The position numbers and the translations under genes are program-made. Of a stretch of 64,000 nt of DNA, positions 8,572-40,300 are shown piece by piece. How positions within the stretch are numbered: position 1 is the stretch's first letter; every line of letters begins with the position of its first letter. The notes under the pieces are model-generated. The model did not search any database and was not told the origin of the DNA. It saw only the letters and a program-made list of their open reading frames with translations. The DNA is taken from positions 1-64,000 of the IMG/VR virus record IMGVR_UViG_3300035698_022190; one strand, written 5' to 3'.

Positions 8572-10598
8572 TTAGTGAACCCATTCTCTAGCAATTGCTG
8601 GGTCTACTTCCATAGGTACAGAAGGGGCATAGTGATTGAAAGCACCAACCATGGCGGTCTTTACATGCTCTGCAACTTCTTCAGCTTCATCTTTATGTAC
8701 TTCCACTAGTATTTCATCATGAATCGCATTAATGATTTTAGCATCATATTTTTCTTTATCAAAAAGTCTTTTTAATCGACACATAGCTAATTTAGTAGTA
8801 CTAGCACCACATCCTTGGAAAGGAAGGTTCTTCGCAATATTAAATGCGTGTGCAACCTGTCTGGAGTCATCCCAATCAAAAGTTGTTAAGTCCCGACGAC
8901 GACCATCTAATGGTGATAAAGCATATTTATTTCTAGCAGCATCTGTTGTTAGCCCGTCTAAAGTCTTTTTAATATAAGTAAATGTTGCGAAATATTTATT
9001 CATTAAATTACGTGCTTCCTTTATTTCAATACCTAAATTTAAAGATAATTTCATAGGACCAATACCATATATTAATCCAAAGGTTAGAGACTTGGCGGGT
9101 GTTCTATACTTCTTTTTCATATCATCTTTTAATTTTCCTTTATCATCAAAAAATGTGTCATAAGGAATATTATAAATTAAGCTAGCTGAATAGCTATGGA
9201 GATCCATATTGTTTTGTAGAGCATATAAAAACTTAGGCTCTTGTGTTAAATGTGCTAATAATCTTAGTTCTTGCAGTTAATTCTCAGTTTTCACTGAGGA
9301 CTGGACTCTCTCTTCACCCAATAGGGTGCGCCGTATATAGTCTCTACACTTGCCCGGAAAAATACTTTCCTGCTAGCTCGGGATTGCCATATCAAGTGAC
9401 TTAGGTTTCCCCGAATTAGCGGCGTTTTCACTTATAAATTTCTTTATAAGGGAGCCTTGCAAAAATCTTTCATGCTTTCTTTCAAGAAAGTCAAGAAAAA
9501 TCTTTTATGTTGACCCGAAAAGTCTGCTGAGATTATTCTGTAATTTGGATCTTGTGCAATAAATGCTGCACGATATTCTGCTGCTGCGGGAATGTTTGTC
9601 ATATTAGGATTTCGGGAAGCATATCTTCCTGAGTCTGCTCCAAGCTGTACAAAGTTGGAGTGAACGCGTCCATCAATAGTTGAAACATTTTGCTCTAAAA
9701 ACTCTTTTCCATACGTAGTAATTTTCTTTTGTTGGCCTCTGTACTCAAGCAAAGCTTCCACTGCTGGATGTTTTACTTTTTTTAAAGCAGCTTCACTGGT
9801 CGATGTTAAACGCGTACGGGTTAAATCATTTAAAATTGGCAACAATTGTTTAGGTGAGTTATAGTTTATATCTAAATTACCAAACAAATCTTTTTGACAA
9901 AATTTTTCAAAGAATTTGTCCAACTTAGTTTTTGCTATATCTGCCTGTTTAACAGCAATATCTTTTAAAGCAAGCCAGCTGTCCCTATCTAAAAATATAC
10001 CATTTATTTCCATATCAGCCGTTACCTTAGTAGTTTCATATTCTAAAGTAGACAGTTCTTTCATTCCTCGTGCATTTAAAAGTTTTTGGATTTTTTTATA
10101 AATTGGTATTAAATATTGAACATCGTCTCCGGCATATTCTAGCTGGCGTTCAGTAAATTCTTGGCCCCACTTCATTCCAACAAAAGTGGTTTGTTGTGTT
10201 TTATCTAAAGCGTGTCCTAAATACTTTAAAGCAACAGAGTTAAAACTAGCACTTTGTTTTTTACCTTGATTTAGTAACTGCTCTCCAATCATAGTGCACT
10301 TTACTGATGGTAAATCATACCCAAAATTTGTTTTTATCATTCCATAATCAAATTTTGCATTGTGTATTACACAAGTGACATCTTTGTCAACAATCCAATC
10401 TAGCACTTTATAGATATGAGTACCTAGCCTATAAACATCAAAAACAAACTGTTCTTTTTCATCTCCTATTTGCAATAATAAAACTTTTGCTTCTAGGGGA
10501 TCAAGACCCGTTGTTTCCGTATCTAAAGCGACCATAGGCTGTCGACGCAAATAAGTTAAGGCTGCATCTAAGTCACTTTCTGATTTTATATATAACAT
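8572..10598 (-). CDS. polA: Family A DNA polymerase with 3'-5' exonuclease; join(10598..9513, 9273..8572), 595 aa
   Basis: ExoI LDTETTG, HNAKFD, YAGDD; motif A restored as ADFSG|QELR after splicing; motif B KSLTFGLIYG; motif C IHDE. Confidence 0.9.
9274..9512 (-). ncRNA. Group I self-splicing intron (239 nt, no ORF) in polymerase motif A
   Basis: 5' exon ends in U and intron ends in G. P AATTCGGGGAAA, Q AATCCCGAGC, R GAGACTA, S AAGAGAGAGTCC. Stems: P2 CTTATAAA-GAAA-TTTATAAG, P3 CGCCG/CGGCG, P8 CACCC/GGGTG, P9 CTCAGT-GAAA-ACTGAG. Confidence 0.9.
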
Positions 10599-12760: not shown

Positions 12761-12937
12761 TTACCGAAACCAGCCTTTATGTGTAAACCACGCATAAAAG
12801 CTAAAGCTTCCCGCAGCCACTAAAGATAGATAGGTTAAAGTCTCGGAATTATAATGATCCCCGATTCCGCCTATTATACTAGTGCATACAACTGCTACTA
12901 TGAATCCCATAGTCAGTGTTTTTTTATTTATCTTCAT
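12761..12937 (-). CDS. Small 2-TM membrane protein (58 aa)
   Basis: MKINKKTLTMGFIVAVVCTSIIGGIG...LSLVAAGSFSFYAWFTHKGWFR*; directly behind a promoter. Confidence 0.6.
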   Translation of the reverse strand: MKINKKTLTMGFIVAVVCTSIIGGIGDHYNSETLTYLSLVAAGSFSFYAWFTHKGWFR

Positions 12938-12971: not shown

Positions 12972-13559
12972 TTAAAATTTATGTATAAATGTTGGCGGAT
13001 TCACCTCCCCACGGAGCCAGTTTAATATATATTGAGAACCAATACAGCCAATAATTTTATTACCGTTCTGTACTATACCAGCTTGCTTTTCATATTCGAG
13101 CTGACAACTACCGTCTTTTACATCTTTAGGTATTGTCAACATCATAGCTTCGAGAGTATTATTTTTATTTTTAGTAAAGGCTGCAATAGCGCGCCCCTCA
13201 GAACGAAGGTCTATCCAATAAAAATCGTTTTTTTCTGCGGTTTCAAATAATAATTTTCTAAACTTTGTATTATCTACCGCACATACAACACAGTCATATC
13301 CATCTAATTCTTTTGCTTTTGTAACGCGTTCTGTTTTTCCTGTAAAACCATACCTAGCTGAAATCGATTCAGCTTTTTCATCAGTGACATCTTCCATACC
13401 AAAATTTTGATATGAGAGGTTATCCATGTCCACAGTGTCATCATCTACAAAAGTAATAAAAGCGTCGTTTAATTGGCTATGTTCATTTAAATCATATAAA
13501 TGAAATGCTAACCATGAGCCAATTCCGCCTGCCCCAACAACTAAAATATTCTTAGTCAT
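12972..13559 (-). CDS. ThiF/E1-family ubiquitin-like-protein adenylating enzyme
   Basis: ILVVGAGGIGS, VDDDTVDMDNLSYQNF, KAE, CAVDN..R, YWID motifs; candidate catalytic Cys in GSCQ. Confidence 0.85.
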   Translation of the reverse strand: MTKNILVVGAGGIGSWLAFHLYDLNEHSQLNDAFITFVDDDTVDMDNLSYQNFGMEDVTDEKAESISARYGFTGKTERVTKAKELDGYDCVVCAVDNTKFRKLLFETAEKNDFYWIDLRSEGRAIAAFTKNKNNTLEAMMLTIPKDVKDGSCQLEYEKQAGIVQNGNKIIGCIGSQYILNWLRGEVNPPTFIHKF

Positions 13560-14030
13560 CTAATCTCCTATTAAATTTATTTGTGAAGGTTCAAAACTTC
13601 TATTTATTCCATCATAAAAAAAAACGTTTGTTTTCTTTTCTAGTAATGAAAAGATGGGATAAAATCCAGCGTATCCCGCGCCGTATATATCTGTTACAGA
13701 AGGTTGCGCAATATGGTTTGGATGTGTATGAAAGATGCCAATAAAATCTTTTTTTGCACCTTTATTCATTAATGTAGTCTGTTTTAATACTTGAAAAAAC
13801 TCGTTTGGATCTGGCACATAGTGAACTTCTGTTTTTAAATTTTGTGTTCCTATAAGCTTTTTCTCAAAGTTTTGTCCTGCTACATTTGTCATACTAATAA
13901 ACTCATTACATTCAGAGTTTTTATCATCTGTTTTTAAACCGAGCAAAGCCCCAACCACTTCATGACCAGGACTTGTTTCGCCATATTTATGCATCTCTGT
14001 CCATACAGATTTCTGCATATTTAAAATCAT
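13560..14030 (-). CDS. JAB/MPN+ (JAMM) metallo-isopeptidase
   Basis: Catalytic Glu in HEVVGALLG and JAMM motif HTHPNHIAQPSVTD (HxHx7Sx2D). Confidence 0.85.
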   Translation of the reverse strand: MILNMQKSVWTEMHKYGETSPGHEVVGALLGLKTDDKNSECNEFISMTNVAGQNFEKKLIGTQNLKTEVHYVPDPNEFFQVLKQTTLMNKGAKKDFIGIFHTHPNHIAQPSVTDIYGAGYAGFYPIFSLLEKKTNVFFYDGINRSFEPSQINLIGD

Positions 14031-14031
14031 T

Positions 14032-14838
14032 TTATGCTTGTGCCGTTGAGCCTGGTGTAAATGTAAATCTACACAGCGGGTTTAAACCTAATTCTTTACA
14101 AATTGCATTTTCTGATTTTCTACCGAAACGCATTTTAAAATTGTTTACAACCCAAGCTCTACTTGCATTTACAAGGCGATTGGCACCTAAAACATCTTTT
14201 GAGTTTGGTCCATATATTGCGTATATTAAGCCATTAGATACCCATAAGTCACGCGCAGCATTATCCATAGTTTTATGGCTAGCCTGCTCCATTAAAATAC
14301 CAGGAGTATTTTGCCGCATTGGCCAGAGTTCACCCAATACGGGCAATGCTATGTGCACTAAGTGTGTCTCATTAGTACCAGTTGGGTGATCATTATCTAC
14401 ACGCCCATAAATACCTTTGTGTCTTTTATAATAATTATGTATTTGTACGTTAGTTTTAGAAATACCTAACGTAGCCAAGTGCGCAGAAATATTAACCCAA
14501 CTTAATCCTTTATTTTCAACTAAATCGCATATGTATTCAAAAGGCGTTGTGGGAAGAACCGTAGCGCCCCAGCCTAAATTATGCCAGGTGACTTTTTCTT
14601 CTTTTAATCGTTTACCTAATTTGTGAACAGTAATCCCTAATTTTTCTGCCAATTCTTTTTGCGTTATTTTATTTCCAACGGTGCCTGCAGTAAAAGTAGC
14701 AGTTTGTTTTTTACCAAAAATAACTGTTGCATCTTTTGTCATATGACCCTTTCTTAAAACTTCGCCCAGAACTCTGGAAAATTTTGGTATGCGGGGCAAT
14801 TTCGCGGTTGTCATGTTTGCTTTTGTCTCTTTCTTCAC
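14032..14838 (-). CDS. Basic hypothetical protein with HTH-like segments
   Basis: GTG start with AGGA RBS; TQKELAEKLGIT is HTH-like. Confidence 0.5.
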   Translation of the reverse strand: MKKETKANMTTAKLPRIPKFSRVLGEVLRKGHMTKDATVIFGKKQTATFTAGTVGNKITQKELAEKLGITVHKLGKRLKEEKVTWHNLGWGATVLPTTPFEYICDLVENKGLSWVNISAHLATLGISKTNVQIHNYYKRHKGIYGRVDNDHPTGTNETHLVHIALPVLGELWPMRQNTPGILMEQASHKTMDNAARDLWVSNGLIYAIYGPNSKDVLGANRLVNASRAWVVNNFKMRFGRKSENAICKELGLNPLCRFTFTPGSTAQA

Positions 14839-14897: not shown

Positions 14898-15149
14898 TTA
14901 ACCGCCTACTAGGGCGTTTGTTAACGTAATGTCTGCTGCGTTGATAAGAATATCAACTGTTAGCTGTACGGGATTCATTTGAATTCCGTCAATATAACAC
15001 CATTTGCTATGATTATTACATTGGTCTAAGACGCGCTCTAAAGCTGCATTTGGGTATTCTTCATACTCATCATGACCACGGCTACTTACTACTTTGATCA
15101 TAATACGTGCTTTTAGTTCTTCCGTTACGTTTACGGGTTTTTGTTTCAT
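14898..15149 (-). CDS. Putative ubiquitin-like protein ending in Gly-Gly (83 aa)
   Basis: C-terminus ITLTNALVGG*; size suits a beta-grasp fold; within about 2 kb of the E1 and JAB genes. Confidence 0.7.
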   Translation of the reverse strand: MKQKPVNVTEELKARIMIKVVSSRGHDEYEEYPNAALERVLDQCNNHSKWCYIDGIQMNPVQLTVDILINAADITLTNALVGG

Positions 15150-15171: not shown

Positions 15172-17379
15172 TTATCCCCTATCAAGGGTATATATCTGTG
15201 TTGCTAACATAGAATCATTATGTAATGCAAATATTCTATTTACTAGTTTGTCCATTCCTACCTGCGTATTACTGCTTTTATCTACTATACAAATATATTG
15301 TCCGGTATTATAATCGTGAACTCCGCACGTGCTTCGCTCAATATCACCGCTATTTAATTCAACAAAATATCTGCGTAATTTACCCTCAATTACATATCCA
15401 AATTTAGTTTTACCATTTCCTAATGTAACAGTCTCCTGTTTTATTTTAAATAGCTTTTCTGTTTCTGTTAGTAATTGTTTAGATTTAGTTATAGCATCCA
15501 CATAAGCTGTTTTTGCATCTGCTATTAAATCTTTTATGTCTTCGGGCTGTATCCCTACAACAACTTCTGGATTTAATAAAACAGTAACAGCTCCTAATAG
15601 ATCATTTTGAGCTTCCAATCTGATTAATTTGTGAGTGTTTCTAACTTTATATTCTTTATCACCTAATACTAGATAGTTTAGATTTTTTGTTCTTTCAAGA
15701 GGAAGCTTAGCTTCAATAGAAACGCCCTCAAAAGCATCACGCAATTTTAAATCAATACCATGCTGTAAATAATTATGTAGCTGTAAACTACAGCTACTAA
15801 CTGATTTTACAAAGAAATTAAAATCTTCTTGTTTTTCGTAACATAAAGCACGTCGTAAACAATCTTCTAATTCAGCTGCATTAATTCGGCAATCATTTAA
15901 ATACGTAAGGGTACTATCTACGCCAAGGCTATTAGTATTTGTGCGCTTTTCAGCTACAAAGGTTACATCACCAATAGTGCCACTATCTTGATATTGGGCT
16001 TTATTTAAGAAAGCATCAAATGCCATTTCAAAGTTAATATCATCAAGGCGCCAACTATAATTTAAAGATCTAACAATATCATAAACCCAATCTGAGGTGC
16101 TTTCAAATGTTAATCGCTGCCCTTCATATTCAATACTACGAGGTTTAAATACAACATTATTTATCTTTAGCTCTGCTTTAGGGTTCTTTTTTGCGCCAGG
16201 TTTTTGAATTAAAATATCCAATTTTTTCTGAATTTTTTCTTTTAAAACCTTTTTGGCTGCCTGTTCTTTTTCTTCTCGTGAGCGTCTTTGATCGTGTCTT
16301 TTTGTAACTAAGCGTAAACGTTCATTGTTAATTAAAGCAAAATCATTCTCACCTTTTTCAGCTTGAAGGGCATGCGCTGCTTTATTGAGTACGTCATTGT
16401 CTGGCAATATAGGGGGCATATCGCTGAAAATAACTGTTCCCAGCTTATGACCCTCTTCTGCAGTATGAGGATTACTTCTATAAAACATTACATAACGCCC
16501 AATATCTAAATAATTATAGGCAGGAAATTCAGAGTCAATCTGAATTAAGTATAGTTTTGTACTATAATAGCTAAAACAGTTTTCACCTATTACAAGCGCA
16601 ACTCTTTTATTATCGTTTCCTTCCCAAACTTTATAGATACCATAGACATCACTATGTCTATCTACTAAATTGCGCATATTTGCTAGACTATCATACGTCG
16701 TAACAACCTCTGAAGGTAAAAATTTATCAAAAGTTTTTATGGCAGTTTTTAATTCACTAGAGCCCCCAATACTTCGTAGAGGAATAGAATTATTTAGGTT
16801 TAAAAAATATGGAAGAAGAGCGTCAATGTCAACACTCAATTCTTCAGCTGTTGTATAAATTTTACTGTACATCGCCCTAATCCTACGATCTGCATCGGGA
16901 GATATTTCTTCTGGTTTTATATAAGCCAAAATTTGTAATAATTTATTCAAGACTTTAATATTAGCCTGAGAAAGTGTAGTCATACAAAAACTTTTGTTAT
17001 GATTATAGTTTTCTACGGCATAGACAAAGGCGGTCTCATTTTCTTTCAAAGAATCAATGCTTTTTGAAACTTGAGGAGACCACCCGTCTTTAGATGTTTT
17101 TGGTGCTTTATGAATGTTTACCTTATAATTTGAGGTGTCCTCTTGAAAAGGGTTAATTTCAATAAGCATGGTTTTTGTACGTAAAACATATGAAATGCGG
17201 TTACGTATTTTATCATAGTGAGAATCACTATCATGATAATTCTTTATTTTAGACTTTAAAGTGTTAAAAACAGCTTTTGCGGAATCATTTTGAGTCCGCA
17301 TCTCTGCTAATTGTTTATCAGAAATACCTAAGTCATATAAAGAATTTATTGCAGGTAGTAATATAAAGCTCGTTTGCAT
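15172..17379 (-). CDS. Large hypothetical protein (735 aa) of the ubiquitin-like module
   Basis: Long ORF with a central coiled coil and a C-terminal domain GKLRRYFV...GQYICIVD...ALHND. Confidence 0.6.
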   Translation of the reverse strand: MQTSFILLPAINSLYDLGISDKQLAEMRTQNDSAKAVFNTLKSKIKNYHDSDSHYDKIRNRISYVLRTKTMLIEINPFQEDTSNYKVNIHKAPKTSKDGWSPQVSKSIDSLKENETAFVYAVENYNHNKSFCMTTLSQANIKVLNKLLQILAYIKPEEISPDADRRIRAMYSKIYTTAEELSVDIDALLPYFLNLNNSIPLRSIGGSSELKTAIKTFDKFLPSEVVTTYDSLANMRNLVDRHSDVYGIYKVWEGNDNKRVALVIGENCFSYYSTKLYLIQIDSEFPAYNYLDIGRYVMFYRSNPHTAEEGHKLGTVIFSDMPPILPDNDVLNKAAHALQAEKGENDFALINNERLRLVTKRHDQRRSREEKEQAAKKVLKEKIQKKLDILIQKPGAKKNPKAELKINNVVFKPRSIEYEGQRLTFESTSDWVYDIVRSLNYSWRLDDINFEMAFDAFLNKAQYQDSGTIGDVTFVAEKRTNTNSLGVDSTLTYLNDCRINAAELEDCLRRALCYEKQEDFNFFVKSVSSCSLQLHNYLQHGIDLKLRDAFEGVSIEAKLPLERTKNLNYLVLGDKEYKVRNTHKLIRLEAQNDLLGAVTVLLNPEVVVGIQPEDIKDLIADAKTAYVDAITKSKQLLTETEKLFKIKQETVTLGNGKTKFGYVIEGKLRRYFVELNSGDIERSTCGVHDYNTGQYICIVDKSSNTQVGMDKLVNRIFALHNDSMLATQIYTLDRG

Positions 17380-17416: not shown

Positions 17417-17851
17417 CTAGCTTTTAGAGTTGAGGTCAAACAATGTTCCATCTTCTGTTTTTTTAATATCGCATGCAGCAATTACTAAATAGTTAGATGG
17501 GTCTGGATGAACAACTACTTCCTTGTCAATCATTTCTTTAGGTGACTTTGCGTCATAATGTTTTAACAGTTTAGCTACTGCGGATTGCGGTGCTAACTCT
17601 GTTTTTCCGCTTACGCTTTTAGTTGTTGTTAACCAAAGTCCTTGTATTCGTTGTGCTCCTTTGTGGTCTTCAACCCAAGCATCAGAAATGTTAAATTTTC
17701 GATCATTTCCATTTGTCACTATAAATACAAGTTTATCTGAGTATGTTCCTTTTTTGGGAACGTGTACTGTGTCTGTGATTACGTCTACTACTGTCGCTAA
17801 GCGTGTTTCTGATCCAATCACTAAATCTAAGAAATCTTTCGTCTCATTCAT
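17417..17851 (-). CDS. Hypothetical protein (possible OB-fold)
   Basis: 144-aa beta-rich ORF; no recognisable family. Confidence 0.5.
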   Translation of the reverse strand: MNETKDFLDLVIGSETRLATVVDVITDTVHVPKKGTYSDKLVFIVTNGNDRKFNISDAWVEDHKGAQRIQGLWLTTTKSVSGKTELAPQSAVAKLLKHYDAKSPKEMIDKEVVVHPDPSNYLVIAACDIKKTEDGTLFDLNSKS

Positions 17852-33702: not shown

Positions 33703-34302
33703 TTATATATGTTTTCCCAACAAATGGTCCATTTCATGTTGCACTATTTGTGGATGGTTACCCTGTATCTCCCGTAAATGTGTTGTCTGCACATTATAAT
33801 GATCTTCAGGCTGCCATTCCATAACTACATTTTTTCCTCGAGAAACTTTTTTTTCTTTCCCAGGAACACTTAAGCATGCCTCAACACGCCTTAAAGTTTT
33901 ACCGGTAGGCTTTACAACTGGATTTAAAATAGCTTTCCAATTCCACTGCCTAGCTTGAGAAGCGTCCGGCCACCTCATTATAAAAACGGCCGGAGGGGGT
34001 GTATTTGGGGGCAAATCATAGTTTTCAGCAACCCATATTTGGTTAGATGCAAGACCCAAACAATTATCGGCTATTGCTTCTGCAGTGTCTTTTAAATCTT
34101 GTATTAAGTCAACAACATATTTTAACCAAGGTTGCTCCGCTTCAGGTTGCTCTTCTACTTCCTCTTTTAGCTCAACAACACTTGTTAAACTGTCACTGAT
34201 AACTTTTTTTGGTTCCTTAGTTTTATCTAACAAGATTGGAACACAACCAGAAGCTCTCTGGGTTAATACTGGTTCATTGTTAGTATGTATTGTGCGTATC
34301 AT
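33703..34302 (-). CDS. def: Peptide deformylase
   Basis: GLASNQI, EACLSVPG and QHEMDHL motifs. Confidence 0.88.
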   Translation of the reverse strand: MIRTIHTNNEPVLTQRASGCVPILLDKTKEPKKVISDSLTSVVELKEEVEEQPEAEQPWLKYVVDLIQDLKDTAEAIADNCLGLASNQIWVAENYDLPPNTPPPAVFIMRWPDASQARQWNWKAILNPVVKPTGKTLRRVEACLSVPGKEKKVSRGKNVVMEWQPEDHYNVQTTHLREIQGNHPQIVQHEMDHLLGKHI

Positions 34303-34310
34303 TTTTTTTC

Positions 34311-34994
34311 CTATTTAGTTTTTAAATTTTTGTGGCCACGATTTACTCTTTCTTTTGAAATTATTAAAGCTTCGTCGAACTTTGCTTTCTTTCTTGATAA
34401 ATATATTGTTGCGTCTTTGTATAAATAGTGGTGTATGTTTATGATTGATTTTGTTTGGGTTGTTTGAAGTTTATAACCATTTTTATTAGTTATATATTGA
34501 ACAATGGTTCCAGAAATTTTTAAATGTTGTTTTAACCACTGTAGCATTTCTAAAGTTCCTAATATAGTAAAATGACAAGATTTTCGTTTATATTTTAGTG
34601 TTGTTTGGTATATAGATATACATCCGTCACCATCAAAATATCCTCGAATAAAGTGCCTAATTAAGCTTTTTGGGACCCCTACAGGGGGCTTTAATATAAG
34701 TGATTTTGCTGGAACACATCCATGTTGGATAAGGTCTTGTTTTAATTTATAATTGTCTGGTCCTATACGTACTGAATCATAAGGCTTTGTATATCTACTG
34801 ATATTATTGGTTAACTTTAAATCTTTTTTAAAAGCTTTTAAGTGCTCAATATCTTGACTTTGGATTTGCAATACTACCTGATTTCTTGTTTTACTAACAT
34901 TGCCGTCTGCAAACATAAAACCTAAATGATATGCTTTGTTTTCTGTGTTTATGTTGTCAAAGAAATTATTATCTTTGTTCATTTTAAATACCAT
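34311..34994 (-). CDS. Free-standing LAGLIDADG homing endonuclease
   Basis: AYHLGFMFADG and HFIRGYFDGDGCI motifs; LSRK C-terminus. Confidence 0.85.
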   Translation of the reverse strand: MVFKMNKDNNFFDNINTENKAYHLGFMFADGNVSKTRNQVVLQIQSQDIEHLKAFKKDLKLTNNISRYTKPYDSVRIGPDNYKLKQDLIQHGCVPAKSLILKPPVGVPKSLIRHFIRGYFDGDGCISIYQTTLKYKRKSCHFTILGTLEMLQWLKQHLKISGTIVQYITNKNGYKLQTTQTKSIINIHHYLYKDATIYLSRKKAKFDEALIISKERVNRGHKNLKTK

Positions 34995-35006
34995 TTAGGC
35001 TTAGTG

Positions 35007-36374
35007 TTAAAGTTTCTTAAAAATTCTTTTTCGTTGGTAGCCCTGCACTTTTAACAGGCCCACTCTTGGGTCAACAAAGTCTACAATTGTAGCAGATGTT
35101 TTGCCTTTTGCCATGCGCATTAAACGTCCCGCTGCTTGCCTTAACTTTATTTCTGATCGTATAGGTGCGGCTAAAAATAAAACCTCTAGTTTGGGAAGGT
35201 CGATTCCAACTGCAAATAAACCATACGTGGATACTACTATAGTTTTTTTACCTTCCTGTAAATCTTTCATTGCCTGTAATCGGTCTTTTTTCTTCATTTG
35301 CGAATGAAGAAAGACTGCCTGTTCACCAAGATGTTTTGCCAAATATTCAACCTGGCTCCGTCTATTACACAAAAAAACTGTTGTTTTTCCTTTATAATCG
35401 GTTTGAAATGTTTTTAAAATTAAAGCATTTCTAGGCTCATCAATAGATAAGTCATTAATCAATTGAATATACTCTTGCGATGATATTAGGGGAAAATAGT
35501 AAGGTGTGTTTATGTAACGTACGTCAGGCGTTATTAAGACGTCTTTTAGTTTGCTTTTTTCTACAGTGTGTATCTTCGGTCCGGACGCAAAATGAATAAC
35601 TTTCGTTAATCCATCCTCACGTTTGGGCGTAGCACTAAATCCATATTTATACTTTGCATTTAAGTGTGACACTGTTTTATACCAAGTGTTAGCTGCGACG
35701 ATATGAATCTCATCACCTATAATTTGTCCGATTATACCATTCAATAAACTAAAACGATTTTTTTCCATTTTAGCTAAGGTTTGGTGTAATCCGACGGTGA
35801 TTGGTTTTACTTCAAATCGTCCATCGCCGATAAAACCAATGTCGTCTTTTTCTATGTTTGTAAACTTTTCAAAAGCTGCGATCGTTTGGTTTGCCAGTTC
35901 AAGTGTATGTACTAGTATAAGAGTGGGCTCTTTACGTAGTAAAGTTAAAGCTACAAAAGTAATGGTTTTGCCACTACCCGTCATTGCCTCTACAACCCCC
36001 ATATCTGTTGCCATACAACTGTCTACTATTTCTTGTTGATAGTCACGGAGTTTTCCTTTGAACTTCAACTTAGAAAAATAGTCAGGTTTCTTATTAGATA
36101 CTCGCTGATCCATTATATCTTTCTCGGTAATCTTGTTTCCATGTTTTCGTAAGATGTCAATGACTTCTGACAAAGCTCCTATAGGAACTTCGATGGTTAT
36201 GTCACTTGTTTGTTCGTAATATTCAAGATCTTGTGGGATATCCCAGGTTGAAAGTCCCAAATCCATTTTTTTAAAAAAGAGAGGATTACTTACAGTCAAG
36301 TATTTACATAGAGCCACCATGCCATCTTCATTTACACCGGTGATTATTGCACTGTTCTTTAATACGATTAACAT
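35007..36374 (-). CDS. SF2 DEAD/DEAH-box DNA helicase (UvsW/ResIII-like)
   Basis: LRDYQ, TGSGKT, DEIH, SATP, GIDLP and QAAGRLMR motifs. Confidence 0.9.
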   Translation of the reverse strand: MLIVLKNSAIITGVNEDGMVALCKYLTVSNPLFFKKMDLGLSTWDIPQDLEYYEQTSDITIEVPIGALSEVIDILRKHGNKITEKDIMDQRVSNKKPDYFSKLKFKGKLRDYQQEIVDSCMATDMGVVEAMTGSGKTITFVALTLLRKEPTLILVHTLELANQTIAAFEKFTNIEKDDIGFIGDGRFEVKPITVGLHQTLAKMEKNRFSLLNGIIGQIIGDEIHIVAANTWYKTVSHLNAKYKYGFSATPKREDGLTKVIHFASGPKIHTVEKSKLKDVLITPDVRYINTPYYFPLISSQEYIQLINDLSIDEPRNALILKTFQTDYKGKTTVFLCNRRSQVEYLAKHLGEQAVFLHSQMKKKDRLQAMKDLQEGKKTIVVSTYGLFAVGIDLPKLEVLFLAAPIRSEIKLRQAAGRLMRMAKGKTSATIVDFVDPRVGLLKVQGYQRKRIFKKL

Positions 36375-36451
36375 AGGTGTTTATGATTTATTATTTAAAA
36401 ACGTGGGCTTATTAAGCTTTTTTCTTATACCAAAAAACAGAAAGATTCTCA

Positions 36452-36480
36452 TTGGATGTTCCCCTAATTTATGTTATATT
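36452..36480 (+). promoter_or_regulatory. Promoter TTGGAT-N17-TATATT for the tail operon
   Basis: Lies in the divergent intergenic region; 17-nt spacer. Confidence 0.6.
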
Positions 36481-36532
36481 TAAAGTAGATACTTAATATA
36501 CTAAACATTTTAAAATAAACCAAATTAAAAAA

Positions 36533-36988
36533 ATGCCCGAAGACAAAAAAAACGCTCCCGAACCTTTACAAGTTAATGTAAAAGTTACAGATGAGCAAAA
36601 AAATAAAATTCTTGAAGAGTTATTTACAAATGGATATACAACCATAGATTTTGAAGTTATACCTGGGAAAGTTTCAGTAACACTAAAAAGTTTAAGCGCT
36701 GCAGACCAAATGACCGTCGAACGTTTTATGAGTGATCTTCAAGGTAGCACCACCTTTATCTTACATGCTTATACTATAGAAGTATTAGCGTGTACTATGT
36801 TAAAATATGGGGATAGTGAATTTAAACAAGTCGCAGATGCTAAGCAGTTCCTAGAAAAATTACCAAGCATAGTTTTAGACAAATTAATTAAAATTCAAAA
36901 CTCTTTTGAACAACAATTAAGATCCGTTTTACAGTTCGAAGAAATCAATAACTATTTTTTCGAAACACCCTCAACGCAGAAAAAGTAA
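36533..36988 (+). CDS. Tail assembly chaperone (gpG-like)
   Basis: Upstream of the tape measure; slippery T TTT TTC at 36955-36961 near its end. Confidence 0.7.
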   Translation: MPEDKKNAPEPLQVNVKVTDEQKNKILEELFTNGYTTIDFEVIPGKVSVTLKSLSAADQMTVERFMSDLQGSTTFILHAYTIEVLACTMLKYGDSEFKQVADAKQFLEKLPSIVLDKLIKIQNSFEQQLRSVLQFEEINNYFFETPSTQKK

Positions 36989-37383
36989 GAGCCGCAATTA
37001 AGGGAGTAGATTTAGGTACTTCCGGTAGTTTGAGGGAAGCTGTAATTTTAAAAGCGTTAGCCTTTGATAGAAAATTAGATTTTTTAAAAACGATTTTGGT
37101 AGCTCAGGCTGCTACTTTAGACACTTCGTCACAAGATCAAATAGATAATTATAAAAAAGTTATTCAAGAATTTGAGGATACCTTTTATTATAAGCTTACA
37201 AATGTTGTTGCTACACAAGGTAAGCCTGCACAGAAAGGAGAAATTACTCCAGAGTTACTTGGAAAGTATGTGGGTAAAAACCGAGGTAAAATGAAAAAAC
37301 TGACTTTCACAACTGGTAAGAAATTTACCCAAGATGTAAAAGAGACAAGTCTAACTGATTTAGCAAAACAAAGAATGAAATAG
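36955..37383 (+). CDS. Tail assembly chaperone -1 frameshift extension (gpGT-like)
   Basis: The -1 frame opens after TAA 36949 and runs from the slippery site (FRNTLNAEKVRAAIKG...) through the 37030-37383 ORF. Confidence 0.75.
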   Translation, partial: FFRNTLNAEKVRAAIKGVDLGTSGSLREAVILKALAFDRKLDFLKTILVAQAATLDTSSQDQIDNYKKVIQEFEDTFYYKLTNVVATQGKPAQKGEITPELLGKYVGKNRGKMKKLTFTTGKKFTQDVKETSLTDLAKQRMK

Positions 37384-37392
37384 GAAATTTAA

Positions 37393-40300
37393 ATGGCTGA
37401 AGAAACCCTAAAATATCGTGTAGAGATTGACTCTTCTGATGTTGGTGCTCAATTAGATCAAATCAGAAATCAAATAGATTCCGCTGTTGGTGCAAGTGCT
37501 GCTTCAGCTGTTGCTCCTCCAGGCCTATCTCAATTTTTAGGAGCAGGTTTTACTCCAGCTTTAGATGGAAGTTTTGCCTCCCCAGATTTAACAGGACGAA
37601 TAAGTTCTGGTATGACCAAAACTCTAGACTTCTTAGAAAGAACAAGCGAACGAGCACAGCTTGGATACTCTAGATTTGTCGATGATGCTAGACGTGTAGG
37701 TCTTTTATCTTCTCCTGATTTTTCACTTTATTCTCCACCACCAAGTGCGGCACAGTCCCAGCTTAACCAAGGTATAACTGGTAATGTTGGGGGTATGTTC
37801 GGATTTGGGTATGATGCTAGGGGATCATTAACTGTAGGCGAATTTAAAAGCATGTCTGCGAGCAGTTTAGCTGGCTTTGCTGGTGATTTGGCCGGCACAG
37901 CTCCAGCAACAATAATAGGGTCCACATTAGCGATGGCTACGCCCTTAGGTTGGGGGACTGTAGGGCTCAGTTTCGGTGCGGACATAGTCGGCGGAATATT
38001 AGCAGGTAATGCAAAGGACCGCAACGCTTTTGCAGAAAGTTTACAAACATTTACTGATCCTATTTTCGGGGGAATGAATCGAAGCACTTCTCGAAACGTA
38101 GCCGAAAATTTAATAGCTCGTACAAAGTCCTATGACGGTTACCTGCAAGGAATGGGAATGAATGATGTTGAAGAAATTATGGCTACTTTCGGAAAAGCTG
38201 GTGGCTATAGTGGTGTAGGAAATGCTCAAGAATTTCAACAAAGAACAAACGAAGTTTTAGACAATGTTAGACAGGTAGCGCATTCTTTAAATGTTTTTCA
38301 AGAAGAGGCTGCACAAATTATGGGTGAGCTTCAACAACGTGGTATTACTTCAGGCGGAAGTATGGGCGGTTTTGCTGCTAAGCAACAAATAGGAGGATCC
38401 ATGGTAGGTATGACCGGAATGGAATTTATCCAAGCTGGTTTACAGGGAGCTCAAATGGTTCAAGGAACAGGAATTGGAGCTACAAATGGTTTTAATATGG
38501 TACAGGGGGCCCTACTAAATGTAGGGGCTGTGCAACAAATGCCCGGTGGAGCTCAACTAGTTAATGACATGGGAGGACAAAACGCCGCCGCTCTTGCCGC
38601 AACTGAAAATGTTTTGCGCCATATGCAAGGTAGTCTTGGACTAGTTAAAACGGCAGGTGTTCTGGGGGGAGGAGACTTCTTTGAGGGCAACGTAACCAAC
38701 CAATTATTAAATGCCGCAACATTTTTTGATGCAGACCCATTAAATTACTTTAGAGCAGTGGGGATGCAAGGGCAGGCAACCGGAACTTTAGGTAGTATGT
38801 ACGGCACACAAGGCATGCAAATAAATATGGTAAACAGTGCTGTGGAAAGAATGCGACAGATGGGGATGATAGCCCCAGGACAAAAAGTGGACAGTACTAT
38901 CTTACAAGGATTTATGCCCGATCTTTATGGTGGTTCGGTTAATGACTCTGCTTTAGCAATACAAGGGGCTTTTCAAGACCCAATGATGGCACGAGCTCGA
39001 ATATTAGAAGGAACAATAGATCAAATCGAAGCAGAAAATGCTTATAGTCCCTGACGAAGGGGTATAGCTTCTTTAAGATCTAATATATCGTCTGTATGAG
39101 GATCTGCAACATATGGTTTCGGCGATGTTCATACAAGACTTCAAGATTTTGGACATGATGTAGTTCAAAAAGAATTGGATTCCTGAAGAGGAAAAACAAC
39201 AACTTCATACAGTGGTGTAAGTGACGGAATCAAATTAATAACTCCTGATGTATCTCAAAGAGCTACTAATGCCGATCTGACAAACCAAGGACGAGAGTAT
39301 TTAGACAACTTAGGAAGAGGCAAAAGTGCACATCTTTACAGAGGAATGGAACGCACTGTAGGTGGTATGATGGCTGAGGGAGGTAATTTAGCAGACTTGC
39401 GCACATTAAATCCTTTAATTATGGACGCAATGTTATATATGCGCGAACCGGCTGAAGTCGCTGGGCAGCTCGCAGAGGATTATATTCTCGGAGAATCACT
39501 TAATTTAACGGGCGATCCTTTGGCAAAAGCCAATCGAGAATATTTAAGACTAAATAATATATGATCTGAAGATAAAACAGGTTTTTTACAAACTAATCCA
39601 GGCGAAAGTCCTTATGACACCTTTGCACAAACGCAGTATGGGGTCGATTCCTATGAGCAATTAGAGGGATGGCAAGCACAAGCCATGCACCAAATGTTCC
39701 GAAATAAAAAACAAGATTTTCATGTTCCTGATAAAGCTTTAAAAAGTATGAGTGCTACAGTGTCTCTCGAAGAAATTGACTTTGGTAATTGGGAAAGCAG
39801 TAAAAACGATTTTTATGAAAGACTAGGCGGTAGTAAGCGTAAAGCGAAACGATTTACTAGAAAGATGGAAGGTATGCCAGGCACTTATTTAGAAAACCTT
39901 GACGCTATACTTTTAGATAAGAATTCTAATGATTATGAATTAGATGCCGCTCAAAATGCAAAAGATGATATTGCTTTCTTCGAAAAGGATTATAATCAAT
40001 TTATTTCAGCAAGAGAGTCTACCAAAATAAAAGACGCAACAATGCAGGAAATACGTTCGTTAGAGCAAAAACTTGGTAAGGATGCCAGCCCTAATATGAT
40101 TAGTGCTGTAATTAGTAGACAAATGGAAGCGGCTAGAAATGGCGAAACAGTTCAGTCACAGGTTCTTTATGGATCAAACTTAACAGCAGCAAAAATAGAA
40201 TTTGATGCAGCAAACGTAGAAGGCCTGTTCGGAGAAGACTTTGATAAATTATATGAAAAGTATGCTGAGACCTTATCTAACGTAGAACTAAAAGATATTA

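What the first reader, a model, noticed from the sequence alone, without database searches (positions are those of the whole stretch)
15172..15420. C-terminal Cys domain of the 735-aa protein as a candidate cryptic E2 or conjugation target
Seen: the module has no recognisable E2. The large protein ends in YVIEGKLRRYFVELNSG...TGQYICIVD...DKLVNRIFALHND, directly upstream of the Ubl gene. From recall, this resembles the C-terminal domain of DUF4132-type proteins (G.LRTY..HLGSG...YLCIV), and G.YICI loosely echoes the G.ICL active-site motif of E2 enzymes. Inference: this Cys may accept Ubl from E1.
Basis: inference. Interest (0 to 1): 0.65.

Follow-up and report, generated by a model that had tools for sequence, protein, structure and literature searches.

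The report
Cryptic E2-like domain in phage Ubl module
The last ~125 residues of a 735-aa phage protein look like a very diverged ubiquitin-conjugating (E2-type) domain with an invariant cysteine. It always sits beside a GG-ended ubiquitin-like gene, a small E1 and a JAB peptidase, so it is probably the missing E2 of a phage-encoded protein-tagging system.

Summary
The 735-aa ORF (15172-17379, minus strand) ends as quoted and lies 22 nt upstream of an 83-aa gene ending in GG, followed by an active-looking JAB and a 195-aa ThiF-type E1.

Evidence for an E2-like role:
- **Invariant cysteine.** Cys697 (YICIVDK) is present in 144/144 full-length representatives of a family with 562 clusters, all metagenomic or viral.
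- **Fold.** AlphaFold models (pLDDT about 83) give a helix, a 4-strand meander, the Cys loop and then helices. The top structural matches are almost all UBC-superfamily folds (BubB, Cap2 E2, Tsg101/Vps23 UEV, RWD, Ubc9, Ubc13). Z never exceeds 5.1 and Foldseek finds nothing significant.
- **DUF7737 link.** The domain is a remote homologue of Pfam DUF7737 (hhalign 90%, E 1.6e-6, Cys aligned).
- **Phage context.** In 34/34 informative phage loci the order is big protein, Ubl, JAB, E1. One rearranged locus keeps Ubl-E1-big.
- **Bacterial covariation.** DUF7737 proteins in bacteria are always next to a Ubl-like gene. Cys-type proteins pair with GG-ended Ubls (11/11). Ser/Ala-type proteins pair with Ubls lacking GG (6/6).

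No canonical E2 is found anywhere in the 210-kb genome. Thioester chemistry is untested, and complex prediction gave no answer. Verdict: a probable cryptic E2, confidence about 0.6.

The parts
15172..17379 (-). 735-aa gene (P0001). The N-terminal half (residues 1-394, 16198-17379) is variable. The middle region (395-611, 15547-16197) is conserved. The C-terminal part is the E2-like domain.
   Evidence: Translation. Family alignment. 562 representative relatives, all with the same C-terminal-half architecture. The N-half has no consistent Pfam signal: at most 3 of 120 members hit any one family.
15175..15546 (-). C-terminal DUF7737-like domain with a UBC-like fold (residues 612-735). It consists of a long helix, a 4-strand meander, the Cys loop and C-terminal helices.
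15289..15291 (-). Codon of Cys697, the proposed Ubl-accepting (thioester) cysteine in YICIVDK.
   Evidence: Present in 144/144 representatives. In the model it lies 8 residues after strand 4 and 13 residues before the next helix. hhalign places it on the Cys of bacterial YLCIVP.
15775..15843 (-). Second conserved cluster in the middle region: Cys513, Cys530, Ser531, His535. Its role is unknown.
   Evidence: Conserved in 136, 127, 136 and 130 of 144 representatives. The residues lie at the ends of three consecutive helices in the C-half model.
14898..15149 (-). 83-aa ubiquitin-like candidate ending LVGG* (Gly82-Gly83 at 14901-14906).
   Evidence: Translation. The C-terminal GG is invariant in 20 unique phage homologues. 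Sixteen end exactly at GG and 4 carry 1-20 extra residues. The beta-grasp fold was not verified: the nearest named Atlas cluster is ThiS at 0.82, which is only a lead.
14032..14838 (-). 268-aa HTH-containing gene between the Ubl and JAB genes. It is a variable insert, not part of the core.
   Evidence: Weak HTH hits only. Present in about a third of related loci and absent in L006, L008, L009 and others.
13560..14030 (-). JAB/JAMM metallopeptidase (156 aa) with an intact E...HTHPxH...S..D motif.
   Evidence: Pfam Prok-JAB, E 3.9e-10. The motif is conserved in 8 homologues. Linked in 34/34 loci.
12972..13559 (-). Minimal ThiF-type E1 (195 aa) with GAGGIGS and DDDTVD..NL.YQ motifs. Cys152 (13104-13106) in GSCQ is invariant.
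   Evidence: Pfam ThiF, E 4.3e-15. Alignment. Cys152 is invariant in 24 unique sequences.
17417..17851 (-). Conserved 144-aa gene immediately upstream. Whether it belongs to the module is uncertain.
   Evidence: Detected by HMM upstream of the big gene in 32 of 35 phage loci and in L038. No Pfam or PHROG family. Absent from the bacterial modules.
12761..12937 (-). 58-aa hydrophobic small gene downstream of the E1 gene. Its position is conserved but its role is unknown.
   Evidence: HMM hits in most loci. Alignment.

Best explanation
The C-terminal ~125 residues of the 735-aa protein are a highly diverged UBC-fold (E2-type) domain of the DUF7737 lineage, and Cys697 is its catalytic cysteine.

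Proposed mechanism:
1. The 195-aa E1 adenylates the C-terminal Gly-Gly of the 83-aa Ubl. It probably forms a thioester on its invariant crossover-loop Cys152.
2. The Ubl is passed to Cys697 of the big protein.
3. The conserved middle region and the variable N-terminal half of the big protein act as a built-in substrate receptor, making an E2/E3 hybrid as proposed for Bil E2s. They direct transfer to a lysine of a still unknown phage or host protein, possibly the big protein itself.
4. The JAB peptidase trims Ubls that carry residues after GG and/or reverses conjugation.

Shown: the gene order, the motifs, the invariance, the fold resemblance, the DUF7737 homology and the covariation. Inferred: every chemical step, the beta-grasp fold of the Ubl, and the target.
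For: - **Invariance.** Cys697 is present in 144/144 and Asp722 in 144/144 representatives, Asn721 in 143 and Arg715 in 140. This holds although identity falls to about 30%.
- **Fold.** The domain model (pLDDT 83.7, pTM 0.73) reads H3-35, four strands, Cys88, then a helix from residue 101. From my knowledge of UbcH5 and Ubc9, this matches the E2 order alpha1, beta1-4, Cys loop, alpha2.
- **No other E2.** None is found in the module or in the genome.
- **Linkage.** Big-Ubl-(insert)-JAB-E1 is kept in 34/34 phage loci with downstream sequence. In the divergent 1059-aa variant L038 the same order holds. In L039 the order is Ubl-E1-big, with no JAB detected.
- **A portable domain.** Only the C-terminal domain is shared with bacterial DUF4132-DUF7737 proteins. 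Those proteins also sit next to a Ubl-like gene in 18/19 loci.
- **Covariation.** Cys-type DUF7737 pairs with a Ubl ending L(V/A)GG* in 11/11 loci. Ser/Ala-type pairs with a Ubl ending G-x-x-W* in 6/6. A long-form actinobacterial protein (L186) keeps both the Cys and the GG.
- **E1 adjacency in bacteria.** In L172 a ThiF gene overlaps the stop codon of the DUF7737 gene.
- **E1 cysteine.** The E1 has an invariant Cys152 at the ThiF/MoeB crossover-loop position.
Against: - The highest-ranked eukaryotic matches are non-catalytic UEV and RWD domains.
- There is no HPN motif and no sequence-profile match to any E2 family or PDB chain.
- I could not see residue-level superpositions. Equivalence of Cys697 with the E2 catalytic Cys rests on secondary-structure order and spacing only.
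- YICIV is a hydrophobic strand-like segment, so the Cys could be a packing residue.
- 18 of the 19 bacterial modules have no adjacent E1.
- The six Ser/Ala-type cases are all from one Bacteroidota clade, so the covariation may reflect a single evolutionary event.
- The Ubl fold is unverified.
- The complex prediction gave no answer.
Confidence: 0.6

Rival explanations
1. The domain is a non-catalytic UEV/RWD-type Ubl-binding or scaffold domain. The minimal E1 conjugates the Ubl directly, without an E2, as in archaeal SAMP/UbaA or Thermus TtuB/TtuC. The 735-aa protein is then an adaptor or the main target, and Cys697 is structural.
Against: A purely structural Cys would be expected to vary (Ser, Ala, Val) across 144 representatives that fall to about 30% identity, as it does in bacterial subfamily B. 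It never does. Where the Cys is lost, the partner Ubl has also lost its GG end (6/6), which points to covalent chemistry between the two.
Confidence: 0.2
2. The module is a sulfur-carrier pathway of the ThiS/MoaD/CysO type. The E1 adenylates and thiocarboxylates the small protein, JAB processes or releases it, and Cys697 is a persulfide relay on an enzyme that thiolates a nucleotide, tRNA or DNA.
For: The E1 is a minimal ThiF/MoeB-like adenylation domain. ThiS-like protein + JAB + E1 trios exist in sulfur metabolism, for example CysO/Mec+ and QbsE/QbsD (my knowledge). The module lies among nucleotide-metabolism genes: class II RNR, dUTPase/DCD in relatives, DNMK. The nearest named Atlas cluster of the Ubl is ThiS, at 0.82.
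Against: No rhodanese, cysteine desulfurase, ThiG/MoaE/CysM-type acceptor or PP-loop enzyme was found in the module or its conserved flanks. The Cys domain resembles UBC-like folds rather than sulfurtransferases.
Confidence: 0.1
3. Cys697 is the nucleophile of a different enzyme, such as a Ubl-specific cysteine peptidase or transpeptidase, and the UBC-like resemblance is coincidental.
Against: No conserved His accompanies the Cys. His720 and His688 are not conserved in the phage family, and the bacterial IHLGS His aligns to Glu/Asp/Thr in phages. A JAB peptidase is already present. No peptidase fold appears in any fold search.
Confidence: 0.07

Closest known systems
Pfam DUF7737 (PF24879), the C-terminal domain of bacterial DUF4132 proteins
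   Same: Same domain by profile-profile comparison: hhalign 90.1%, E 1.6e-6, 85 columns. The motif pattern is shared: G.(L/M)R.Y ... Y(I/L)CIV ... A(L)L..D..(I/V)...I..(T/Q)(L/I). Both sit at the C-terminal end of a large protein, and both are adjacent to a small gene ending in GG.
   Different: The phage protein scores below the Pfam cut-off (19.2 vs 27 bits). It has no DUF4132 domain, and the rest of the protein is unrelated. The phage modules always carry an E1 and nearly always a JAB. The bacterial ones are two-gene modules, with an E1 adjacent in only 1 of 19. No function for DUF7737 or DUF4132 was found in the literature library.
Non-canonical bacterial E2s: BubB of Bub (6E/DUF6527) operons and the E2 domain of CBASS Cap2
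   Different: BubB uses Ser and an oxyester, whereas this domain has an invariant Cys. Bub and Cap2 are bacterial defence genes with E1 fusions, whereas this is a phage gene with a free 195-aa E1. There is no detectable sequence similarity.
Bil (bacterial ISG15-like) systems
   Same: The parts list matches: Ubl, E2, JAB, E1. The E2 is proposed to recognise the target directly without an E3 (PMC11601596).
   Different: [quoted passage not shown] Here the E1 is a single 195-aa adenylation domain. The Bil E2 is a small free-standing protein, whereas here the E2-like domain ends a 735-aa protein. Bil is host-encoded and acts against phage, whereas this module is phage-encoded.
UEV and RWD domains (Tsg101/Vps23, VPS37A, GCN2, FANCL ELF)
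   Different: These domains lack a catalytic Cys. Here the Cys is invariant and covaries with the GG end of the partner Ubl.
E2-independent prokaryotic Ubl systems (archaeal SAMP/UbaA/HvJAMM1; Thermus TtuB/TtuC/TtuD)
   Same: A small GG-ended protein, a ThiF-type E1 and a JAMM peptidase, with no recognisable E2 (my knowledge of these systems).
   Different: Those systems have no obligatorily linked large protein with a UBC-like Cys domain, and they double as sulfur carriers with known acceptor enzymes.

Membership tests
UBC/E2 superfamily (UQ_con, Prok-E2 families) | UBC fold: N-terminal helix, four-strand antiparallel meander, then helices | tested here: inconclusive
UBC/E2 superfamily (UQ_con, Prok-E2 families) | Catalytic Cys in the segment between strand 4 and helix 2 | tested here: inconclusive
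   Cys697 is invariant (144/144). In the model it lies 8 residues after strand 4 and 13 residues before the next helix. Residue-level superposition on an E2 could not be inspected.
UBC/E2 superfamily (UQ_con, Prok-E2 families) | HPN motif upstream of the Cys (canonical E2s) | tested here: not met
   The consensus upstream of the Cys is VYDYPxGxYIC, with no His-Pro-Asn. Non-canonical bacterial E2s also lack this motif (PMC11601596).
UBC/E2 superfamily (UQ_con, Prok-E2 families) | Sequence-profile match to an E2 family | tested here: not met
   None of the 142 members hits an E2 family in Pfam. There are no PDB sequence hits at E<=10. UQ_con, Prok-E2_A and Prok-E2_B have no match in the genome. 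PADLOC gives nothing.
UBC/E2 superfamily (UQ_con, Prok-E2 families) | Forms a Ubl~Cys thioester downstream of an E1 | not testable with these tools
   This needs biochemistry. The complex prediction gave no answer.
Pfam DUF7737 (PF24879) | HMM score over the gathering cut-off (27 bits) | tested here: not met
   P0001 scores 14.6-19.2 bits and 18 bits in six-frame search. 32 of 142 members hit the family, all below the cut-off.
Pfam DUF7737 (PF24879) | Homology by profile-profile comparison with genuine members | tested here: met
   hhalign gives 90.1%, E 1.6e-6, with the Cys aligned. With full-length profiles it gives 52.9%, E 1.4e-4, over the same region. An HMM built from 10 bacterial members finds only this ORF in the 210-kb genome, at E 7.5e-4.
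Pfam DUF7737 (PF24879) | Lies C-terminal to a DUF4132 domain | tested here: not met
   P0001 has no DUF4132 hit, and nothing outside residues 634-727 aligns to the bacterial proteins.
Bil / Bub / type II CBASS Ubl-conjugation operons | Co-encoded Ubl (or target C-terminus), E1, E2 and a peptidase | tested here: met
   A GG-ended Ubl, ThiF, JAB and the E2-like domain are linked in 34/34 loci.
Bil / Bub / type II CBASS Ubl-conjugation operons | Family-specific architectures: Bil IAD-AAD-CYS E1, Bub JAB-E1 or E2-E1 fusions plus DUF6527, Cap2 E2-E1 fusion with a CD-NTase | tested here: not met
   The E1 is a free 195-aa single domain. There is no DUF6527 or CD-NTase, and no PADLOC match.
ThiS/MoaD-type sulfur-carrier pathways | Linked sulfur donor or acceptor enzymes (rhodanese, desulfurase, ThiG, MoaE, CysM) | tested here: not met
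   None was found among module proteins or conserved neighbours.

The most novel reading that the evidence does not exclude
DUF7737 is a previously unrecognised family of E2 enzymes. In large uncultured phages it is the catalytic end of a 600-1000-aa E2/substrate-receptor fusion. Together with a minimal E1, a GG-ended Ubl and a JAB peptidase, this forms a complete virus-encoded protein-conjugation cascade expressed with the replication genes, used to tag host or phage proteins. In bacteria the same domain, fused to DUF4132, works with its own neighbouring Ubl. One Bacteroidota clade has decayed to a non-catalytic UEV-like pair, with Ser/Ala in the domain and a Ubl without GG.
Probability: 0.45. 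Interest if true: 0.85.

Novelty: new variant of a known kind. Interest (0 to 1): 0.72.

Why it matters
Ubiquitin-like conjugation in bacteria (CBASS Cap2, Bil, Bub) is so far known as a host weapon against phages. A complete Ubl-E1-E2-JAB cascade carried by phages would show that the viral side uses the same chemistry. This family is large: 562 clusters at 50% identity, found on contigs of 146-210 kb. The cascade would come with an unusual E2 fused to its own presumed substrate receptor.

The result also gives a first testable function to two widespread domains of unknown function. DUF7737 would be an E2-like Cys domain. DUF4132 proteins would be partners of a neighbouring GG-ended Ubl. The bacterial relatives also supply a natural active/inactive pair (Cys with GG versus Ser/Ala without GG) on which to test this.

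A single thioester assay with a Cys-to-Ala control would settle the central claim.

Tried and rejected
- **Complex prediction** of E1 (x2) + Ubl + C-domain: 'no answer', score 0.00 against a mark of 0.32. This is no evidence either way.
- **Foldseek against PDB**, both models: nothing at E<=0.001.
- **ESM Atlas shape search and Atlas look-alikes of the C-domain**: uninformative. The Atlas's own model has pLDDT 0.44.
- **BFVD**: only unnamed viral proteins. The best is A0A516M0H5 (prob 1.00, TMq 0.54), probably a family relative.
- **Profile searches of PDB sequences** with the C-half and the C-domain: only a chance syntaxin hit, or none.
- **PADLOC**: no defence-system E2 match.
- **PHROGs**: no family for the big protein, the Ubl or the 144-aa neighbour.
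- **Phage records**: megablast and tblastn against 50,697 records found no relative of the big protein.
- **Species genomes**: a pattern scan of 185,579 species genomes found no relative.
- **The 268-aa gene between Ubl and JAB as the hidden E2**: rejected, because it is absent from many otherwise intact modules.
- **E. coli YehI as a DUF7737 example**: rejected. It has DUF4132 only.
- **Phage Ubl versus the bacterial Ubl-like neighbours**: hhalign finds no significant similarity (prob 0.6%). Their kinship rests only on size, position and the L(V/A)GG end.
- **crAss-like phages**: they carry a related ThiF gene beside a 'metalloprotease', but no Ubl or big-protein homologue was detected there.
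- **Literature**: searches for DUF4132, DUF7737, MolR and YehI/YehK found no functional study.

No alternative genetic code was used.
Full report
**What is there.** The window is the first 64 kb of a 210,208-bp virus record that CheckV rates as complete. On the minus strand, between a class II ribonucleotide reductase and a sigma-70/DNA polymerase A block, lies a tight gene row:
- a 144-aa gene (17417-17851)
- the 735-aa gene (15172-17379)
- an 83-aa gene ending LVGG* (14898-15149)
- a 268-aa HTH gene (14032-14838)
- a JAB peptidase (13560-14030)
- a 195-aa ThiF-type E1 (12972-13559)
- a 58-aa hydrophobic gene (12761-12937)

Its span 15172-15420 corresponds to residues 654-735. Cys697 is encoded at 15289-15291.

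**The family.** A word search found 15 relatives. A profile search of 1.84 billion representatives found 562 at E<=0.001 and 204 at E<=1e-30. Nearly all are 600-800 aa, with the match in their C-terminal half. None is in 50,697 phage records, and none was found in 185,579 species genomes by pattern scan. The family therefore belongs to uncultured phages. The polymerase is only about 30% identical to those of crAss-like, Leptolyngbya and Thermus phages.

The N-terminal half is poorly conserved and has no Pfam signal. The C-terminal half is well conserved. Across 144 full-length representatives, Cys697 and Asp722 are the only residues present in all 144. They are followed by Asn721 and Gly666 (143), Tyr671 and Arg563 (142) and Arg715 (140). 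A second conserved cluster (Cys513, Cys530, Ser531, His535) lies in the middle region and is unexplained.

**Fold.** AlphaFold2 was run on residues 395-735 (15-row alignment, pLDDT 82.7) and on residues 610-735 (142 rows, pLDDT 83.7, pTM 0.73). Both give the same C-terminal domain: a long helix, four antiparallel strands, a short extended piece carrying the Cys, a loop, and two or three helices.

**The DUF4132 recall.** Pfam DUF7737 is hit weakly by 32 of 142 family members, while no other family is hit by more than three. The N-terminal halves, scanned the same way, show no such enrichment.

I fetched genuine DUF7737 proteins from Bacteroidota and Actinomycetota genomes. hhalign of the phage domain profile against ten of them gives 90.1% probability, E 1.6e-6, over 85 columns, with Cys697 on the Cys of YLCIVP. 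Only this domain is shared; the DUF4132 part has no counterpart in the phage protein. E. coli YehI has DUF4132 but no DUF7737.

**Context in phages.** In 35 loci fetched by identity or by pattern, every one with sequence downstream of the big gene (34/34) has the Ubl, JAB and E1 genes in the same order. These loci hold about 20 distinct Ubl sequences. The 268-aa gene is present in only about a third of them, so it is an insert, not the missing E2. The 144-aa upstream gene is usually present.

Because these phages are syntenic over the whole region, linkage alone is weak evidence. Two divergent cases add weight. A 1059-aa variant keeps Ubl-JAB-E1 (L038), and an AT-rich contig has the order Ubl-E1-big with no JAB detected and quite different neighbours (L039).

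Further details of the partner genes:
- All phage Ubls keep GG. Sixteen of 20 unique sequences end there and four carry 1-20 extra residues, which gives the JAB peptidase a processing role.
- The E1 keeps the nucleotide-binding and Asp motifs, and Cys152 is invariant in 24 unique sequences.

**Context in bacteria.** This was unexpected and is the most informative result. Across 19 DUF4132-DUF7737 loci from two phyla, only two genes are conserved: the DUF7737 protein and an adjacent 85-280-aa Ubl-like gene (18/19).
- Where the DUF7737 domain has the Cys, the neighbour ends L(V/A)GG*. There are 13 such loci; in 11 the neighbour's end is readable, and all 11 end this way.
- Where the domain has Ser or Ala (six ~1700-aa Bacteroidota proteins), the neighbour ends G-(R/S/T)-(L/Y)-W* with no terminal GG (6/6).
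- A long-form actinobacterial protein (L186) keeps both the Cys and the GG.
- In L172 a canonical ThiF gene overlaps the stop codon of the DUF7737 gene. The other 18 loci have no E1 nearby.

The six non-Cys cases probably stem from one ancestor, so this counts as one clean co-loss rather than six. Even so, it is what a covalent Cys-to-GG relationship predicts, and it parallels the E2/UEV split in eukaryotes.

**Most likely mechanism.** The E1 adenylates the Ubl and probably forms a thioester on Cys152. The Ubl moves to Cys697 of the E2-like domain. The rest of the big protein selects the target. JAB matures the Ubl and/or removes it from targets. Every chemical step is inferred. I give this 0.6.

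**Rivals.**
- A non-catalytic UEV/RWD-like domain in an E2-less, SAMP-like system (0.2).
- A sulfur-carrier pathway with Cys697 as a persulfide relay (0.1). No sulfur enzymes are linked.
- Another Cys enzyme, such as a peptidase (0.07). No conserved His accompanies the Cys.

The complex prediction returned no answer and counts for nothing.

**Comparison with known systems.** Functionally the module looks like Bil, Bub and type II CBASS operons (PMC11601596). It differs in three ways: it is phage-encoded, its E1 is a bare 195-aa adenylation domain, and its E2-like domain is fused to the end of a large protein and belongs to the DUF7737 lineage, which no paper in the library discusses. It fails the sequence-based membership tests for E2 families and scores under the DUF7737 cut-off. 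I therefore describe it as working like an E2 and being a remote DUF7737 relative, not as a member of either Pfam family.

**Novelty and score.** This is a new variant of a known kind of system (Ubl conjugation). Interest is 0.72. The central claim is cheap to test, would assign a function to DUF7737, and would document a virus-encoded conjugation cascade.

Noticed in passing
Loci L172-L190 (bacterial genomes G001-G617); e.g. L172:2220-5771, L174:4449-7421, L177:5389-10877: Bacterial DUF4132-DUF7737 proteins form a conserved two-gene module with an adjacent Ubl-like gene (18/19 loci). Proteins with the Cys pair with Ubls ending L(V/A)GG* (11/11). Bacteroidota ~1700-aa proteins with Ser or Ala pair with Ubls ending GxxW* (6/6). 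A ThiF gene is adjacent in only one locus (L172).
   Followed up: partly
window 15775-15843 (-), residues Cys513, Cys530, Ser531, His535 of the 735-aa protein: A second conserved Cys/Cys/Ser/His cluster, present in 127-136 of 144 representatives, lies at the ends of three helices in the middle region. It could be a metal site or a second catalytic centre, such as an E3-like relay. It was not explained.
   Followed up: partly
window 17417-17851 (-): A 144-aa gene with no known family is conserved immediately upstream of the big gene in most related phages. It has a conserved ...V.V.PDP.N(F/Y)LV...C... C-terminal motif. It may be a further module component or a substrate.
   Followed up: partly
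window 14032-14838 (-): A 268-aa gene with a weak HTH signal is inserted between the Ubl and JAB genes. It is present in only about a third of related loci and is very divergent among them. This behaviour suits a mobile or homing-type insert.
   Followed up: partly
window 8572-9207 and 9444-10598 (-): DNA polymerase A is encoded in two separate ORFs (384 aa with exonuclease plus the N-terminal polymerase part, and 211 aa with the C-terminal polymerase part), about 236 nt apart. Relatives have it intact (L003, L004, L006), split (L001), or interrupted by a LAGLIDADG gene (L007). Their RNR genes carry inteins (L001, L005).
   Followed up: no
L040 (Kehishuvirus 'tikkala' OQ198717.1, 71507-73896) and 37 other phage records: crAss-like Bacteroides phages carry a ThiF-like gene (annotated as a thiamine biosynthesis protein) related to the phage E1. 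It sits next to a 'metalloprotease domain' gene and near a B12-dependent RNR. My HMMs detected no Ubl or big-protein homologue there.
   Followed up: partly
L003:10192-10491, L004:2708-2962, L008:6239-6463, L009:4324-4596, L038:10192-10425: Some phage Ubls carry 1-20 residues after the GG (for example GGYTEHPRG..., GGSCN, GGSI). These would need trimming, presumably by the linked JAB peptidase.
   Followed up: no
window about 34000-38000: Cumulative GC skew and AT skew change sign near 36 kb, where gene orientation switches from the minus to the plus strand. This may mark a divergent transcription or replication boundary.
   Followed up: no
L041 (E. coli K-12 2197410-2204289): E. coli yehI (DUF4132, without DUF7737) is followed by the small gene yehK and preceded by the yehH pseudogene and the WGR protein YehF. 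It lies next to the MoxR/VWA genes yehLMPQ. Whether YehK is a Ubl-like partner was not examined.
   Followed up: no
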